Of a DNA stretch of 64,000 nucleotides, positions 33,898 through 45,872 are shown one piece after another. The notes beneath the pieces were generated by a model. The model did not search any database. It was given only the letters and a program-made list of their open reading frames with translations, and was not told the origin of the DNA. A program made the position numbers and the translations under genes. The stretch's first letter is position 1. Every line of letters begins with the position of its first letter. The stretch covers positions 1,820,422 to 1,884,421 of the forward strand of contig CAJFCJ010000002.1 in NCBI GenBank assembly GCA_904063045.1, read 5' to 3'. The DNA is from Dimorphilus gyrociliatus. Its lineage: Eukaryota; Animalia; Annelida.

Positions 33898-34192
33898 TAG
33901 AAATTGACTAATGGCGTATCAAAAGTAATCTTCGGCTAACGTTTAAAAACGTAAAAAAATTCCTAGAAGATTCTCAAGAAGAAGTTAATACGATTGTGTG
34001 ATAGATATAGATATTGTACATTTAATCTGCCATCGATCTGAAACATTATTTAATTATAAGGAGAGTTCCGGGGCTGCTATTCAGTTTTACTGTCAGCATA
34101 TAAATTTAGATTATAAATCAAGAGCTGCTAAAACACAACGAAATCATACTGAACTTTTGAGGAAGAGAAAAAGGAGAGAATAGAGTTTAATT

Positions 34193-37100
34193 ATGATTGT
34201 GCCGCCAGAACAAGGTATTGAATTTTGAATGATTTTACTTCGTCACTTTTATTAGTGTATAATTTACTCCTTGAATTACACACGTGTAGAAACATTTAGG
34301 AAACATAAACTTGAGAATTGGTACTAACAGCGTTTCTTTCAATCACCTCGATCGATTTGTTGAGGATAGCACTTATTGATTAGCACGGCTTTGCAGGACA
34401 ACAGTCGAAGCCATGGGTTGATAGTCTGTCTGAAACCATTTATGCATCTGATGTACTCTTTAGCATCGGTTGTTATTAATTTATTGCTAAAGTCTTGCAG
34501 CATTATCTTTATAGTTTGCTGTACCAATAAGTAGGACAACTAAGTCAATAGTCAGATTGATTGCACCGTCTACAAAGAAGTTTTATATGGTAGAATTCAA
34601 TATTTCTTCTATGAAACATTGATAAATAGGCTGTACTTATAGTATCTCTTATCATCGGTTGTTAGATGCAAAAAAATGAACCAAAAAACCTCGTGCATTG
34701 TAGCTGAAATTTTTCTTCCTCGAGGCACCACTTTATCATTGATCTTTTACCACAAATACAGGCCTCAACAAGGAGAGCGATCCTCGACAATATGACAAGA
34801 CAAAGTCAGAGTCCAGGACACCAGAGGTATTAGTTTTGAAAATACTGAAAATTAATATCACTAACCAACGTTTTTTCTTACGAAAACCTTGAAAATATTT
34901 TTAGAGACAAAATTCATCTATTTATACATCAACTAGTCAGCATACGACCCCAGCACAAGATGGTAAAAAACGTAGAAAGTTAGGACACAGAAGAGTGAAT
35001 GAAGCGGGACAAGTTACATACAAAAAGGTCTGATCATTTCTCATATATTGATATTTTAGCTACTCTTTCTAAACGTCTGTTTTAGTTTACCTTTTCATCT
35101 TTTATACTTGTAAAATATTATAAAAAATAATAATATGATATTCGTTTCTCAAAAGGAGTGTACTAAGCAATTTTATCATTAGTCATCATCATAATTTCCT
35201 TTTTAAACAAATGTAAAAGAGAGAGAGAGAGAGAGAGAGAAAGTTATCTATAAAATAGTAAAGTTTATTTTGGGAATGAGATATTCGTACATTTTATAAA
35301 TTCTAAATTTCAAAAATATTTAAACGACAACATAGAAATACTTTGCGTGAATTTATCCGTAAATAATAGTAATATTGTTCAGTTATTTTCTTATTATCTT
35401 TTTATGTTTGAATATAAAAATGATTATCACGTTTGGGTGTGTGCAGCTAGTCGCTGATGACGTACTATTTTCATTAGTTTACATTTTATATTTAATGTTG
35501 TCATTTAGAAAATCACTTCGAAGCATTGCACATCTAACTATCATCCTTTTGAGAAACCATTTATGTCTAGATACTATTTAAAGACTGATAACTATGTATA
35601 GAGATATTTGTGATGTAGATTGTGAATATAGAGTTTATGAGTGTCTTTTGTATCGTCACTCAATCAGGCAGACATTTTACATTGGATAGATGTGTAAGAT
35701 GAAATCATTTGGGTTTGGAACAACATCTCCTATTTTGAAAAGTATATCGACAGGTCACGTTCCTGCTTTATACGGAAGCGATAGTTTAGGTAGACTAAAT
35801 GGATTTAAACGCACTTGGTGGCGTGATGAGAGATCTTTACAAGATTTATTTACTTCTAAGGTGTAAAAATATGATTTTTTGACCTGTGCATTTGATAGTT
35901 TCGTGTGTGTAAACGTTTAATCATGACTTTGTCTTAATCATTTCTGTTGTATGTGAGCAGAAGCCGACATCAGAACTTATAAGGGCCATACAGAAAGGTG
36001 TATACTTTTCACTAGGAGATTCTAAGGAATCCGAAAATAAGCACGACTTGTTAATTAGCGACTTCTCAGTAGTGCAGACAATCTTCTTTCCAAAGTAAGT
36101 TTTAGTAAAGCGTTATTAACTGGTTTCCGCTCGATTTCAGAAATCCACTTCCGAGCTTATGGAAGCTGCACAGTTGGGCATGGGTCAACATATTCGATAC
36201 CTGATGTCCTCTGACTGCAATCGCGATGTTCTTCTACAGGATTTTTCTATAGTTGAGCAGATGTTTTTCCCGAGGTTCGATTACTTGTCGTCCCTCTCTG
36301 GATTCACTATTTTTTTTTGCCAAATGAGATTTTTGATTTGTTATAATTTCATTGAAAAAAAATAATTAAAAGATGAAATTTTTGACTGATAAAATCTCGT
36401 TAACATGGATATTAAATTAACGCCGGGTTGGCATGCTTATCCGGGTTGTGTGGAAGATTCCTTCCGTTTCTACTTTTCTTTTTTTATTTTCACCAAAGGA
36501 CCAAGCCTGTTTTCTTCTCTTTTTTTTCATTTAGCACTTGATGTTAGATTTAAATGTTAGACGGCAAAGTAACGCTGTTTTTATTTTATTTTTAATTCTG
36601 CAAACGAAATTAATAACCTGATATATGTTTTATTTAATTTTTGCTTGAATTTAGTTTAATTGCAATCTTTTAAACAACAGGGAAGGATCTAATATGACAC
36701 TACCCCACGAACTCAGCGATTTCCGTTTCAAAATTTACGCACCAATGGCGTTTAGATATTTCAGAAAATTGTTTAAAATTGACCCAAAAGACTTTCTCGT
36801 TTCTCTAACATCTCAACAACTAAAGGAATTGTCGAATCCTGGTGCTAGTGGCTCTATATTCTACATTACTCACGACGACGAATTTATCATTAAAACAGTA
36901 CAACATAAGGAGGCAGATTTTTTACAAAAACTTTTACCTGGCTACTTTATGAATATAAGTCAAAATCCTAGGACTCTATTGCCGAAATTTTATGGTCTAT
37001 ACTGTTATCAGGTAAAAACGTTGAATACTATTAAAAGAATTTTTATTTATCTCTTCTTTGGTTAGCCAAATAGATTACCGTTTAGCACAGGCGATATTAT

Positions 37101-39686
37101 TATGCATAAAACTGGCAAATTATCATCTCTATGCTTCTCCCATAAACACCGATGTTGTCGCTATAAAAGATTAAATAGTAGACATGTGTAATACCTACGT
37201 ATTTTAGATTTAAGGCCAATTTAATTGTATATAATTTGATTCTGATATGGAAAAAATAAATTCATTGTAAAGTTATTAATTAGATTTTTTTTTATTTCAG
37301 TGTGGTGGTAAGAACATACGATTTTGCGTTATGAACAATTTGTTACCATCGGGTATAAAATTGCACGAAAAGTACGATTTAAAGGGTTCAACTTATAGAA
37401 GGAAAGCATCCAAGGAGGAGAGGGCAAAAAAGTGTCCTACCTTAAAAGATTTAGATTTCACTGATAATCATCAAAAAGGTTTAAAATTGGAGGCAGAAAC
37501 TTACAATGCTCTCCTGAAAACAATAAGTAGAGATGTGAGAGTTTTAGCATCGTTTAAGATAATGGACTACTCTTTATTGGTTGGTATCCATAACTTGGAT
37601 GAAGCCAGAGAGGAGAGAGAAGCTGAGAGAGCAAAAATAGGTAAAGAGATTGTAGAAGATGCAACTTGCTTATCAGAAAGTCAGCACACGTTACATAATC
37701 AAAGTTCTGTCGATGGTTAGTGAAATAGGATGATTTAAATAAGTAGTAATTTAAGTAATTTAACTCTAAAAAAATCAATTCTTCAGGAACAGGCTTAAAT
37801 AGGGGAAGGCCTACAAAGAGAATAGCGAATTGGTCAACAGCTATGGAACAAATCGAAGCAACTGTTGAACCAGTTGAGTTAGAAAATGATAATATTCCAC
37901 CTGGTGGCATACCGGCGAGAAATGACAATGGCCAACGACTGCTACTCTATATTGGAATTATCGATATTCTTCAGCACTACCGGTTAAAAAAGAAGTTAGA
38001 ACATGGTATTAAAAGTCTTCTGGCTGATGGAGATACTATATCAGTAGTTAATCCTACATTTTATGCGGAACGATTCGAGTCGTTCTTTAGGGATAAGGTC
38101 TTCAAAAAGACAGCTTCATGTAAGTAAATTGCAAAATTTATATTTTGATTAACGGTCTTTCCCTTTTTTAATCGTACACAATTTATAAAGCCAAAAGAAT
38201 GTTCAAATTATTATAAAACTGCATAACTGCGTACGTACATAAGCTGGCAAAAAAAAAACATACATTCACAAATATACGAATCCATCAGCGAGAAAAAAAT
38301 CGAACCAATTATTATGATGTAGCGTCTTTGAACATTCTATTATGGCACCTTTTACTTCGTGCTAGTGTGGTTCGTGATATCGATGTTGCATACTGTTTCA
38401 GTGGACGAGCCTGAAGTGAAAGGTCCGCACATGCGGTTTCGCCGTCTCGTTCAACTCGGTAAACAATCTATCTGCTCAATAACTTGTTCAATTTCTTTTT
38501 TTCCTTTATTTTCTGTTTTTTTTTCTGCATGTCTATTTCTTTTTAAAAAAAAAAAGACATACTATTCATTATCATCCATCCCAATCATTTTCCTAATCGA
38601 TGTCTACATCTATTCTTTGTAATTTTCAGTATTTTTTTTTTATTTTTTAATGTTTTATTTTTGTGTTTTTTTTTTAAACCTTTCCTTGTTTGGAACTTTT
38701 CATTGATTATCATTAGATCAATTAGATCGATATAAATAGCAAGAGCATAGGATTTTAGACTATTTCGTTTCAAGAACCTTGTCTAGAAGTAGGACTTTAA
38801 AAAAAATAATTTTCGTTCTATGTTTTTCGTTGATCATTTGCTACTTTTTTTTTTATTTCAAAAGTGTTGTACGCTGCAATGAATCACTTGTATACATGAA
38901 TAGTCTATATACTAAATTTTCATTCTCTCTTTTTCATATCGCATATAAACAGCTATGCGACAATCTCCATCGAAAAAGAAAACGGGTAAACTTAGATCGA
39001 ATTCTACCGATGCAGTGGAGGAGACTCAGCGTGCGGCCGGAAGTGGTTCAACCACAGCTCTTGTTCATTCCGAAACTATAACTAGTCATCGTCCTGATTT
39101 GGTAACAGATTTACATGACGTCCAACCATCAACGCCTGTCAGGCGGTTAGTTATATATTTATACTTGACTTGATTTCCCGTTTATATATCTATCTCTACT
39201 TACATAATGTTAAATACATACAGGGAAACTATTTTATGAAAAGTTTGTAATATAGTTAGGTTTTCTCTTCATGATTTTTTTTCGCTTTTAGAAAATAATT
39301 TAAATTTACTTGATGTTTGAAACAAGCAAAAAATTTTAATTTATAGGGAGGAAAGAATAATTTCACAATGGCAGAGAAGTGTAGCAACTCGTATTGACTC
39401 ATCAGAAACTTATACAACTTCAGTAAAAGGAGAATCCAGTGTTTGTAAGCATATTGAAAATTTTTTTTTTGTGTTTTTTTTTGCCATCTGATTTTTTTTT
39501 TAAACGTTTCGTTAACGTTTTTCTGTATTGTGACTTTTTCATTCTCTAGCCGTGGCAGTGAAAGAAAGCGAAACTACTTTGGACGATGTGAATGTCACCG
39601 TAGACACACCAAATCACGAACAGGAAGAAGACGACAAATCCGAAGTGGTGAGTGACAAAGAGCTTGCTGTGGTGACGCCTCCTTAA
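34193..39686 (+). CDS. PIP5K1: Phosphatidylinositol 4-phosphate 5-kinase type I
   Basis: [16 protein letters not shown]; [15 protein letters not shown]; [36 protein letters not shown]; YDLKGST; LKDLDF; MDYSLLVG; IIDILQ.YRL.KKLEH. First exon MIVPPEQ at 34193; last exon ends ..VVTPP* at 39686. Confidence 0.96.
35218..35240. repeat. (GA)n microsatellite in a PIP5K1 intron
   Basis: About 11 AG units. Confidence 0.9.
35961..36094 (+). other. PIP5K1 mutually exclusive exon A (134 nt)
   Basis: cag|AAGCCG...CCAAA|gtaagt; encodes [44 protein letters not shown]. Confidence 0.85.
36141..36274 (+). other. PIP5K1 mutually exclusive exon B (134 nt)
   Basis: cag|AAATCC...CCGAG|gttcga; encodes [44 protein letters not shown]. 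Confidence 0.85.
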
Positions 39687-44011: not shown

Positions 44012-44241
44012 GTGGAAATTAGTTGCTAGTAATATTTACTTGTGAAGCTTGTTATGATAAAAAAAATCGATATACATAGTTTATATTAATATACATAGTG
44101 TATGCTTATATGTATATTTCTATAAAAATATAGTTTTAATATCTAACTCTCCTCTCGAATTACAATTCACTCCTGAGACTGTAATTATCATAGGCTACGA
44201 AAAATAACTTATGGCCTTTCTATTTAATGGATATCGAATTT

Positions 44242-45872
44242 CTAACTTAGTCGTCTTAAACACGATGTCTCTCTTTCTGTAAGTTCTATTTTAGTTCCAC
44301 TCAACCTATGACAATCTATAATGGAACATGTACGATCTGGACGGCAAAACTGATAAGTGAGGTTTGAACAGGGTTCACAATGATCATTTGCCGCAGCCGA
44401 TTCGTTAGCAGAAGATATTGGCTCTGCTAATTTGACATGTTTTATACCTTCTGAGCTGGTATTATCGTTTTTATACGTCCCTAAGAGATTATCATGTCGA
44501 GAAACGTTATCTCTTTCTCTTATCTTTGTAAAGTCACTATCTTGATAGTAGCCATTATATTTAAGCCTTTTGAGAGGTTTTTTATTTAACTGTTTAGTTT
44601 GAATGGAAAATTTCTCTCCCTCTAAAACAACTTTTACAGGTTTTGGCATTCTTCAGAGACATTAAGATAAATTTACTATATTTACCTAAAGCATCTTTTA
44701 TTCTCCGTTTACAAATACAACAGTTAACTATAACAAGGACTAGAAATAGCATAAACGAAAAAGCAATTCCTGTCCTTTTTCCCCTTTTCTGAACGTCTAA
44801 TGATCCGTCTTCGCATTCCTTTAATCTTCAAAAGATATAATAGCTAATGATTAATTAAAAGTGACGGTTATAGAAATTTTCTCACAGTATTTCCAAGTTC
44901 ATAAAGGGTTTGTTATATATACTTTTTATTGATTTGCAATTTCTAGTTAAATATAACCAACATTCATAGACGAATGAAGCCGTTTGACAATCCTTTATGG
45001 TATTTAAATTGTTCTTAATATCAAGTTCAGGATTGACGTTTATCTCTTGAAAACATTTATTTAAGACTTTCATTCTAATTTCCTTATTTTGACAATTTTC
45101 TAAAAAAAATTTAGACAAGCAATTATCTCTCTTGTTAATAGTTATACAAACAATAGAAGTATATATATATTACCAGGTACCATCCATCTTTTTATACTAT
45201 AATACTTGGATAACTTTCTCACAGCCTTATTAAATCTATAATTTGAAGTTGTAAATAGTTTGTCTACTAACAAGTCAATTATGTAATAGAATATTCGGGG
45301 GCAACGAACGGTATTCATAACCTTTAGACAGTTGTAAAAAGATTTGAAAGAATACGATTCTTTTCTTTGGCATTCGGTAATTATTTGATAATAATAACAG
45401 TAAATTTCTATATCGCATTTTGTTGAATATTTATAAAATACTTTCAAATGATTTCCATTTGAAAATTGGCAATTCTCTAAAAAATCTAATGAGAAATTAA
45501 GGAAAAATAGATAAAAAGAAATCTAGAATATGCATATAAAGAAACAATAAACAAATTTGTAAATATTGCATAATAATTGAGATGTTTGTTTTGTTTTATA
45601 AATAACCCCTTACAGTTGGTTAAATTTAGATATTGTTCATATCGTAAAATAATACGCCCATGGCAAGCATTCAATAAGGCATTGTTGTAACAATCTAACG
45701 CTAAATCCAGTTTAGAACAATATGTAAAATCATTTTGCGTTTCTCCTAATAATCCTTGACAAATATCAAAATGCATTTGACAATATTCTCTACTTTTACA
45801 CGACAAACTAAGACATTCTTGTTTGTTTATTAGTTTTAAGAAAAATAAATATTTAATCAAATATTTCAACAT
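44242..45872 (-). CDS. Novel type I membrane protein with Cys-rich helical ectodomain repeats (about 443 aa)
   Basis: Exons 45872-45614, 45485-45174, 45126 (or 45099)-44886, 44825-44686 and 44621-44242 join in frame with matching phases. TM GIAFSFMLFLVLVIVNCCIC followed by KRR. No family confidently recognised. Confidence 0.68.

What the first reader, a model, noticed from the sequence alone, without database searches (positions are those of the whole stretch)
35961..36274. Tandem-duplicated mutually exclusive exons rebuild the N-lobe start of the PIP5K1 kinase
Two consecutive exons are both exactly 134 nt and both phase 0 to phase 2. Each encodes the same kinase segment: K.TSEL..A.Q.G......S.....D.L..DFS.V...FFP, corresponding to the vertebrate SSALKGAIQLGI..ERDVLMQDF.VVESIFFP. 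They are separated by only 46 nt (36095-36140), with a TTAAC branch candidate about 24 nt from the donor, suggesting steric exclusion. Including both or neither shifts the frame. Exon B is canonical ([12 protein letters not shown]); exon A is strongly divergent ([12 protein letters not shown]). This N-lobe region contributes to dimerisation and regulator contacts in type I PIP5Ks, so one locus may make two differently regulated PI(4,5)P2 synthases. With the alternative first exon and downstream cassette, at least 2x2x2 isoforms are possible. The ORF track misses exon A entirely.
Basis: partly seen in the sequence, partly recalled or inferred. Interest (0 to 1): 0.8.

Follow-up and report, generated by a model that had tools for sequence, protein, structure and literature searches.

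The report
Swappable exon pair in worm PIP5K
The single type I PIP5K lipid-kinase gene in this window carries two neighbouring 134-base exons, and its messages use one or the other; the swapped piece includes a loop where two kinase molecules touch, and other annelid worms have a similar exon pair.

Summary
Exons A (35961-36094) and B (36141-36274) are both 134 nt with AG/GT borders. They are 46 nt apart and 18/44 residues are identical.

Spliced contigs from three runs join the upstream exon to A and to B, and join A and B to the next exon. No A-to-B joint and no skip of both was listed. Contig depths suggest roughly equal use.

Including both exons, neither exon, or the unspliced spacer gives an early stop codon. 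Steric exclusion by the 46-nt spacer is plausible but untested.

The swapped segment aligns to helix alpha1 through strand beta1 of zebrafish PIP5K1A. It holds the dimer contacts Asp84 and Leu86, and both exons keep them.

New here: seven metagenome contigs, from at least five distinct annelid-like sequences, carry a tandem pair of 131-nt copies of the same exon, both under purifying selection. Helobdella, Owenia, Lingula, Haliotis and Tubulanus have one copy. Whether the window's pair descends from that duplication is unresolved.

Not borne out: exon B is not clearly "canonical", and the "alternative first exon" is joined in series.

Earlier scan notes report many other exon pairs of this kind in this genome, but not this one. 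I found no paper on it. It is a new member of a known kind, of moderate interest.

The parts
34193..34214 (+). Coding end of exon 1, with the candidate ATG at 34193
   Evidence: Spliced joint 34214>34762 in runs X1, X3 and X4; sequence read.
34762..34826 (+).
   Evidence: Joined on both sides in X1, X3 and X4 (34214>34762 and 34826>34905).
34905..35027 (+). Exon 3, the constitutive upstream exon; it ends in phase 0 with ..[17 protein letters not shown]
   Evidence: Translation. Its donor is joined either to 35961 or to 36141.
35961..36094 (+). Exon 4A, 134 nt, first of the two alternative exons (helix alpha1, alpha1-alpha1a loop, strand beta1)
   Evidence: Joints 35027>35961 (X1, X3, X4) and 36094>36681 (X1, X4). 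Matches 4TZ7 at 21.3 bits.
36095..36140 (+). 46-nt spacer between the two exons, GTAAGT...TTTCAG; never seen removed as an intron
   Evidence: No 36094>36141 joint in four runs. Read through in exon A's frame, it gives AAG TAA, a stop at once (sequence).
36116..36120 (+). TTAAC, candidate branch site for the exon B acceptor; 24 nt from the exon A donor and 21 nt from the acceptor
   Evidence: Sequence. Its function was not tested.
36141..36274 (+). Exon 4B, 134 nt, second of the two alternative exons
   Evidence: Joints 35027>36141 (X1, X3) and 36274>36681 (X1, X3, X4). Matches 4TZ7 at 24.5 bits.
36681..37011 (+). Exon 5, constitutive; start of the Pfam PIP5K domain
   Evidence: PF01504 at E = 7e-28. 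Joint 37011>37301.
37301..37715 (+). Exon 6, constitutive; holds the RDVRVL stretch (partners Arg287 and Val291 of the dimer contact) and the MDYSL motif
   Evidence: ORF translation. Joints; borders read.
37787..38119 (+). Exon 7, constitutive; holds the IID motif
   Evidence: ORF translation. Joint 37715>37787; borders read.

Best explanation
The gene is a type I PI4P 5-kinase gene with a tandem-duplicated internal exon that is spliced in a mutually exclusive way.

What is shown: each mature message seen joins exon 3 to either 4A or 4B, and that exon to exon 5. Any other outcome cannot make the kinase. Including both exons gives a stop 21 codons into 4B. Skipping both gives a stop at codon 4 of exon 5. 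Keeping the spacer gives an immediate stop. Both isoforms appear at similar abundance in bulk RNA.

What is inferred:
- Aberrant forms are probably removed by nonsense-mediated decay.
- In this compact genome the 46-nt spacer, with only about 24 nt between donor and branch candidate, is probably too short to be excised. That would add a steric block.
- The protein consequence is a swap of 44 residues that build helix alpha1, the alpha1-alpha1a loop and strand beta1 of the PIPK-specific N-lobe subdomain. That loop is one of three elements of the PIP5K side-to-side dimer interface.
- Both versions keep the contact residues Asp84 and Leu86, and the constitutive exon keeps their partners Arg287 and Val291. 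Both isoforms should therefore fold, dimerise and be active.
- 26 of 44 positions differ, mostly in alpha1 and the loop. The isoforms most likely differ in dimer strength, in partner choice (A-A, B-B or A-B), or in binding of a regulator, not in catalysis.

A comparable exon pair is maintained under purifying selection in several other annelid-like sequences, so splice-level diversification of this segment is an old and selected feature in at least part of Annelida.
For: Sequence anatomy.

RNA:
- Joints 35027>35961 (X1, X3, X4), 35027>36141 (X1, X3), 36094>36681 (X1, X4) and 36274>36681 (X1, X3, X4), all GT..AG.
- No 4A>4B joint and no skip of both exons.
- Contigs confined to one exon have depth 225 (A) and 213 (B) against 467 for the constitutive contig in X1. 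In X3 the figures are 29.8 and 44.7 against 54.2.

Frame.

Family: PF01504. The nearest proteins are lophotrochozoan type I PIP5Ks.

Structure mapping:
- Both exons align to 4TZ7 chain residues 14-54.
- The construct is residues 49-431 plus Met-Ala-Ser, so chain residues 39 and 41 are Asp84 and Leu86 of the alpha1-alpha1a loop.
- D84R makes the kinase monomeric with low activity, and R287D rescues it (PMC4570271; PMC9470164).
- Asp and Leu are invariant in all 16 aligned copies.

Selection:
- A against B identity by codon position is 23/31/8 of 44.
- Exons A and B are identical in a lineage that differs by 5.3% in neighbouring exons.

Other annelids:
- Seven contigs hold two 131-nt AG/GT copies.
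- pN/pS is 0.12-0.38 for upstream copies and 0.00-0.09 for downstream copies.
- L006 falls in a starred clade with Helobdella.
Against: - All RNA evidence is from assembled contigs (Logan). These show presence but not absence, and they drop rare variants, so low-level A+B or skipped forms cannot be excluded.
- X1 and X3 are only guessed to be RNA, although their many GT..AG joints show cDNA.
- Depth is one figure per contig, so the 1:1 ratio is rough.
- No tissue, sex or stage information is available.
- Steric exclusion is not shown. The median intron of the species named by earlier scan notes is 66 bp and its splicing is adapted to short introns (PMC7854359), so 46 nt is short but not proven unspliceable.
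- Functional difference between the isoforms is pure inference. No model or assay of the joined proteins was made.
Confidence: 0.85

Rival explanations
1. Exclusivity rests on reading frame and mRNA surveillance alone. The 46-nt spacer is not a steric block but a by-product of genome compaction.
For: - Related exon pairs in other annelid-like contigs are 76, 99, 376, 387, 687 and 818 nt apart. Those spacers are long enough to be spliced, yet both copies stay under purifying selection.
- All copies are 131 or 134 nt, which is 2 mod 3, so double inclusion always shifts the frame.
- The species named by earlier scan notes splices short introns well (median 66 bp; PMC7854359).
Against: - 46 nt is well below the shortest introns seen removed in this gene (71 and 78 nt).
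- The branch candidate is 24 nt from the donor.
- In another annelid, a transcript contig (L006) keeps its 60-nt spacer unspliced while both outer junctions are spliced.
Confidence: 0.3
2. The window's pair arose by a separate duplication in the dinophilid lineage and is not inherited from the duplication seen in the other annelids.
For: - A and B are both 44 codons, while all 14 other copies are 43. The extra residue falls in the same alignment column.
- Neither A nor B can be placed with the upstream or downstream type. AU tests do not reject A+B as a clade (p = 0.38).
- Both score slightly better against the downstream type.
- Owenia, Helobdella and the oligochaete-like contigs have one copy, so copy number has changed more than once.
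Against: - It is the same exon, in the same gene, with the same phase and tandem order, within one phylum.
- A against B third-position identity is 8/44, so the duplication is old.
- With 43 columns and two long branches the tree has no power.
Confidence: 0.45
3. One of the two exons is a decaying, unused duplicate, or the pair is an assembly artefact.
For: - Exon A has unusual residues at otherwise near-invariant positions, for example QKG where the others have QLG.
- The mechanical ORF list misses exon A.
Against: - Both exons are spliced to both neighbours in independent runs of two lineages, at similar depth.
- Both have open frames and canonical splice sites.
- The codon-position pattern is that of coding sequence.
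- Both are unchanged in a relative that is 5.3% divergent elsewhere.
Confidence: 0.02

Closest known systems
Alpha-tropomyosin exons 2/3 (steric-hindrance mutually exclusive exons; from my own knowledge, not looked up here)
   Same: Two adjacent alternative exons. The branch site of the downstream exon lies too close to the donor of the upstream exon for the spacer to be removed, and one exon is chosen per message.
   Different: Here the steric block is only inferred from a 46-nt spacer. The organism habitually splices introns of about 66 nt. Related annelid pairs have long spacers, so frame incompatibility is the only rule common to all.
Vertebrate PIP5K1A/B/C paralogues and the C-terminal splice variants of PIP5K1C (from my own knowledge, not looked up here)
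   Same: Several PI(4,5)P2 synthases share one catalytic core and differ in regulatory surfaces. The dimer-interface residues are conserved, so heterodimers were thought conceivable (PMC4570271).
   Different: Vertebrates get this diversity from gene duplication and from tails outside the kinase core. Here one gene swaps a segment inside the N-lobe of the core, including a dimer-interface loop. I found no paper describing this for any PIP5K.
Tandem 131-nt exon pair in annelid-like metagenome contigs L001-L007
   Same: Same exon of the same gene, in tandem, same phase, AG/GT borders, and both copies under purifying selection. One transcript contig shows both outer junctions spliced with the spacer retained.
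   Different: These copies are 131 nt rather than 134. They show clear upstream (..KPERDVL..VVES..) and downstream (..SITSL..KPKRDLL..IVET..) types, to which the window's A and B cannot be assigned. Spacers range from 60 to 818 nt. The organisms are unnamed.
Other mutually exclusive exon pairs reported in this genome by earlier scan notes (arrestin, p38, anoctamin and others)
   Same: Same kind of gene architecture in the same genome. Several are also said to be shared with other annelids.
   Different: They are in different genes. I did not test those notes.

Membership tests
Type I phosphatidylinositol 4-phosphate 5-kinase (PIPK domain, PF01504) | PIPK catalytic domain above Pfam's threshold | tested here: met
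   Exon 5 alone scores 98.1 bits against a cut-off of 27.
Type I phosphatidylinositol 4-phosphate 5-kinase (PIPK domain, PF01504) | Catalytic motifs IIK, MDYSL and IID | tested here: met
   [14 protein letters not shown] and IGIIDIL are present in the exon ORFs. The motif roles are taken from PMC4570271.
Type I phosphatidylinositol 4-phosphate 5-kinase (PIPK domain, PF01504) | Type I side-to-side dimer signature: Asp84 and Leu86 in the alpha1-alpha1a loop, and Arg287 and Val291 on alpha6 | tested here: met
   Exon A has HDLL and exon B has RDVL. The constitutive exon has RDVRVL twelve residues before MDYSL. Numbering was derived from the 4TZ7 alignment and the construct description.
Type I phosphatidylinositol 4-phosphate 5-kinase (PIPK domain, PF01504) | PI4P 5-kinase activity | not testable with these tools
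   This needs an enzyme assay.
Mutually exclusive exons from tandem exon duplication | Adjacent homologous exons of equal length and phase with their own splice sites | tested here: met
   134 nt each, phase 0 to 2, AG/GT borders, 18/44 identical, E = 7e-11.
Mutually exclusive exons from tandem exon duplication | Each exon is joined to both constitutive neighbours in RNA | tested here: met
   Four GT..AG joints in X1. Subsets of them appear in X3 and X4.
Mutually exclusive exons from tandem exon duplication | The two exons are not joined to each other and not both skipped | tested here: inconclusive
   No such joint in four runs. These are contigs, which show presence and not absence.
Mutually exclusive exons from tandem exon duplication | Both copies are kept by selection | tested here: met
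   Codon-position identity of 23/31/8. No differences in a lineage that is 5.3% divergent elsewhere. In other annelid-like contigs pN/pS is 0.00-0.38.
Steric-hindrance type of exclusion | Donor-to-branch distance too short for spliceosome assembly on the spacer | tested here: inconclusive
   The spacer is 46 nt and TTAAC is 24 nt from the donor. The shortest spliced introns in this gene are 71 and 78 nt. There is no functional test, and the species' median intron is 66 bp.
U2/U12 splice-site incompatibility type of exclusion | One exon flanked by U12-type sites (/RTATCC donor) | tested here: not met
   The donors are GTAAGT, GTTCGA and GTCTGA, and the acceptors are all AG.
Competing RNA pairing (docking site/selector) type of exclusion | Conserved intronic pairing elements or excess structure | tested here: inconclusive
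   The fold of 35931-36304 is no more stable than shuffles (z = 0.33). Long-range pairing with the flanking introns was not searched.

The most novel reading that the evidence does not exclude
Annelids may use this exon switch in place of gene duplication to make PIP5K isoforms with different dimer behaviour. The two alpha1-alpha1a loops could set which protomers pair (A-A, B-B or A-B), and so set the dimer-dependent gain of PI(4,5)P2 synthesis in different cells. The complete nucleotide identity of both exons between lineages could reflect a dense splicing code that controls the choice.
Probability: 0.2. Interest if true: 0.65.

Novelty: new member of a known kind. Interest (0 to 1): 0.5.

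Why it matters
PIP5K makes most of the plasma-membrane PI(4,5)P2. Its activity depends on dimerisation through a small interface, and D84R cuts activity several-fold (PMC4570271, PMC9470164).

A natural, selected pair of alternative versions of one interface element would be a ready-made experiment on how that interface tunes the enzyme. It keeps the two key contact residues and changes most of their surroundings.

It also shows that annelids diversify this kinase inside the catalytic core by splicing. Vertebrates instead use three paralogues and C-terminal variants.

For annotation, public gene models of annelids probably miss one isoform. No alternative version of this segment appeared among the annotated isoforms I inspected.

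Tried and rejected
1. A word search with the A+B alignment for short protein fragments found no candidate. The length window was 24-77 aa, so the blank says nothing.
2. Looking up the exact proteins P0002, P0003, P0185 and P0274 gave no gene on record. The longest isoforms P0376 and P0379 worked.
3. A 43-column exon tree and AU tests could not decide whether A and B are orthologous to the upstream and downstream annelid types.
4. An RNA fold of the exon pair showed no excess structure.
5. The top hit P0001 (Plutella) looked like a six-fold exon array. It consists of identical repeated pieces and is most likely an assembly or annotation artefact.
6. A weak tblastn hit upstream of the Owenia exon turned out to be a short tandem repeat of the acceptor and exon start, not a second exon.
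7. L030 (ENA contig) holds an intronless copy of a downstream-type message, so it says nothing about exon structure.
8. I did not verify the organism. The name Dimorphilus gyrociliatus comes from earlier scan notes. It fits the best protein hits, 33% G+C and the short introns.
Full report
**1. Observation**

- Exon A is 35961-36094 and exon B is 36141-36274. Each is 134 nt, which is 44 codons plus two bases.
- Each is preceded by AG and followed by GT. The A donor is GTAAGT and the B donor is GTTCGA.
- The spacer between them is 46 nt. TTAAC lies 24 nt from its first base.
- The two peptides share 18 of 44 residues (BLASTP E = 7e-11).
- At DNA level only 63 of 134 bases agree. Identity at codon positions 1, 2 and 3 is 23, 31 and 8 of 44. 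Synonymous sites are saturated while the protein is constrained, so this is an old duplication of a coding exon, not a decaying copy or a recent conversion.
- The upstream exon ends in phase 0 at 35027.
- The first base of the downstream exon at 36681 completes the split codon. The reading runs on into the PIPK domain (PF01504, 98 bits).
- A tblastn scan finds no third copy in the window.

**2. RNA evidence**

Sixteen public runs hold parts of the stretch, and eight of them are on record as RNA. I laid 34000-38200 on four of them. All four are kept as assembled contigs.

| Joint | Runs |
|---|---|
| 35027>35961 (upstream exon to A) | X1, X3, X4 |
| 35027>36141 (upstream exon to B) | X1, X3 |
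| 36094>36681 (A to next exon) | X1, X4 |
| 36274>36681 (B to next exon) | X1, X3, X4 |

- All four joints are GT..AG.
- No joint from A to B was listed, and no joint that skips both.
- X4 is a metatranscriptome of the same species (99% or more alike).
- X1 and X3 are a relative. Their neighbouring introns are also removed in the contigs, so they are cDNA.

Contig depth gives a rough idea of relative use.

| Run | Exon A contig | Exon B contig | Constitutive contig |
|---|---|---|---|
| X1 | 225 | 213 | 467 |
| X3 | 29.8 | 44.7 | 54.2 |

In X1 the two alternative contigs add up to about the constitutive depth, as expected if each message holds one of the two exons. Contigs cannot show absence and give one depth each, so rare aberrant forms and exact ratios remain open.

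**3. Why only one exon per message**

The sequence shows three things.
- With both exons included, the frame shifts and a stop comes 21 codons into exon B.
- With neither exon, a stop comes at the fourth codon of exon 5.
- With the spacer retained, the codon after the last full codon of exon A is TAA.

No other product can therefore encode the kinase. Removal of aberrant forms by surveillance is likely but not shown.

- The shortest introns I see removed in this gene are 71 and 78 nt.
- The donor-to-branch distance in the spacer would be about 24 nt.

It is not proven.
- The species named by earlier scan notes has a median intron of 66 bp, and its splicing is adapted to short introns (PMC7854359).
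- The related exon pairs described in section 5 are up to 818 nt apart, so sterics cannot be the general rule.

Two other mechanisms find no support.
- None of the splice sites is of the U12 type.
- The exon pair shows no excess RNA structure (z = 0.33).

**4. What the segment is in the protein**

- Both exons align to residues 14-54 of the zebrafish PIP5K1A crystal chain. Exon A scores 21.3 bits and exon B 24.5 bits.
- The construct is residues 49-431 behind Met-Ala-Ser (PMC4570271). The aligned segment is therefore residues 59-99: helix alpha1, the alpha1-alpha1a loop, alpha1a and strand beta1 of the PIPK-specific part of the N-lobe.
- Chain residues 39 and 41 are Asp84 and Leu86.
- That paper names the alpha1-alpha1a loop as one of three elements of the side-to-side dimer interface. 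Asp84 pairs with Arg287 and Leu86 contacts Val291.
- D84R gives a monomer with very low activity, and R287D restores it.
- An independent study confirms that dimerisation raises activity several-fold for human PIP5KB D51R (PMC9470164).
- In the window exon A reads HDLL and exon B reads RDVL, so both keep the Asp and the Leu.
- The constitutive exon 6 keeps RDVRVL at the right distance from MDYSL.
- Across 16 aligned copies the Asp and Leu are invariant.

The two exons differ mainly in the second half of alpha1 and in the loop. I infer that both isoforms are active dimer-forming kinases. They would differ in the strength or partner choice of dimerisation, or in a regulator contact. This was not tested.

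**5. Relatives**

The nearest proteins to exon 5 are mollusc, brachiopod and annelid type I PIP5Ks, at most 81% identical.

- In those animals the segment is 43 residues and almost invariant.
- All annotated isoforms I inspected carry one version. These include 36 isoforms in Mytilus edulis, five in Owenia and four in Tubulanus.
- Both window exons are far from that consensus.

A pattern scan of metagenome contigs with the A+B alignment gave 29 loci.
- Seven of them (L001-L007, at least five distinct sequences) hold two tandem copies of this exon.
- Each copy is 131 nt with AG/GT borders. The spacers are 60, 76, 99, 376, 387, 687 and 818 nt.
- The upstream copies resemble the general consensus (..KPERDVL..VVES..).
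- The downstream copies form a distinct type (..SITSL..KPKRDLL..IVET..), which groups as a clade at 82/75 support.
- Between loci synonymous differences are near saturation (pS 0.3-0.98). pN/pS is 0.12-0.38 for upstream copies and 0.00-0.09 for downstream copies. Both are therefore maintained as coding.
- L006 is a transcript contig. The upstream exon is joined to copy 1, the 60-nt spacer is retained, and copy 2 is joined to the rest of the kinase as one 403-residue open frame.
- On a kinase-domain tree L006 and four unnamed proteins that carry the downstream type fall in a starred clade (100/96) with the leech Helobdella, apart from molluscs, Lingula and Tubulanus. I therefore take these loci for annelids.

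One copy only was found in these genomic loci:
- Helobdella
- Lingula and Haliotis
- Owenia and Tubulanus
- the 22 oligochaete-like contigs, which carry the downstream type alone

**6. Is the window's pair the same duplication?**

This is unresolved.
- A and B sit on long branches (1.58 and 1.03 changes per column) and are unplaced.
- AU tests reject none of A+B, B+downstream type or A+downstream type.
- For a shared origin: it is the same exon, phase and tandem arrangement within one phylum, and the duplication is old.
- For a separate origin: both A and B have one extra codon that all 14 other copies lack, in the same alignment column.

**7. An unexplained point**

In X1 and X3 the constitutive exons differ from the window at 57 of 1077 positions (5.3%). 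The contigs over exon A and exon B have no difference in 137 nt each. At 5.3% the chance of that is about 3e-7.

The depth bookkeeping shows no second, window-like lineage in X1. Both alternative exons are therefore frozen at synonymous sites between lineages. Dense splicing signals in alternative exons would explain this, but I could not test it.

**8.

- The exons ending at 34214, 34826 and 35027 are joined in series in three runs. I see no alternative first exon.
- I did not find support for a downstream cassette within 34000-38200. The 18 nt at 37601 that X1 and X3 lack are present in X4 and look like a lineage indel.

**9. Known or new**

Full-text searches for mutually exclusive exons with PIP5K, with the enzyme's full name and with annelids found no description of this event.

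Earlier notes of this scan list many other exon pairs of the same kind in this genome and name it Dimorphilus gyrociliatus. None concerns this gene. I did not verify the species name.

**10. Step left out**

**11. Verdict**

This is a real, expressed, mutually exclusive exon pair in a type I PIP5K. It alters a dimer-interface element while keeping the key contacts, and a comparable selected pair exists in other annelids. It is a new member of a well-known kind of gene architecture, of moderate interest.

Noticed in passing
window 35959-36275 (exons A and B), runs X1 and X3: Both alternative exons are identical, base for base, in a relative whose neighbouring coding exons differ by 5.3% (57 of 1077). 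The chance of no difference in 274 nt is about 3e-7. This points to constraint on synonymous sites.
   Followed up: partly
L035 (Owenia fusiformis) 44100-44335: Three to four tandem copies of about 58 nt lie directly upstream of the real exon. Each holds the acceptor region plus the first 30 nt or so of the PIP5K alpha1 exon. It is a partial micro-duplication, not a second exon.
   Followed up: partly
L006 432-753 and L017 436-566 (metatranscriptome contigs of other annelids): These transcript contigs have the upstream exon spliced to this exon, but the next short spacer or intron is retained. In L006 the 60-nt spacer sits between the two exon copies.
   Followed up: partly
window 37601: 18 nt (six codons in the variable insert of the kinase) are absent in X1 and X3 and present in X4. 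This looks like an indel between lineages, not a splice variant.
   Followed up: no
window 34193-35027: The three 5' coding exons are joined in series in X1, X3 and X4.
   Followed up: yes
window 38117-38190 and 38954: An X3 contig leaves the window near 38117 and continues with letters that match 38954 onward, which is the next exon. An X1 contig runs on into the intron to 38188. This may be intron retention or an alternative 3' end.
   Followed up: partly
P0001 (Plutella xylostella, 435 aa): This gene model repeats identical pieces of the exon that follows the alpha1 exon, up to six times. It is most likely an assembly or annotation artefact.
   Followed up: partly
L008-L029 (22 metagenome contigs): These oligochaete-like contigs carry only the downstream-type exon between the flanking exons. 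If the duplication is older than clitellates, the upstream copy was lost there.
   Followed up: partly
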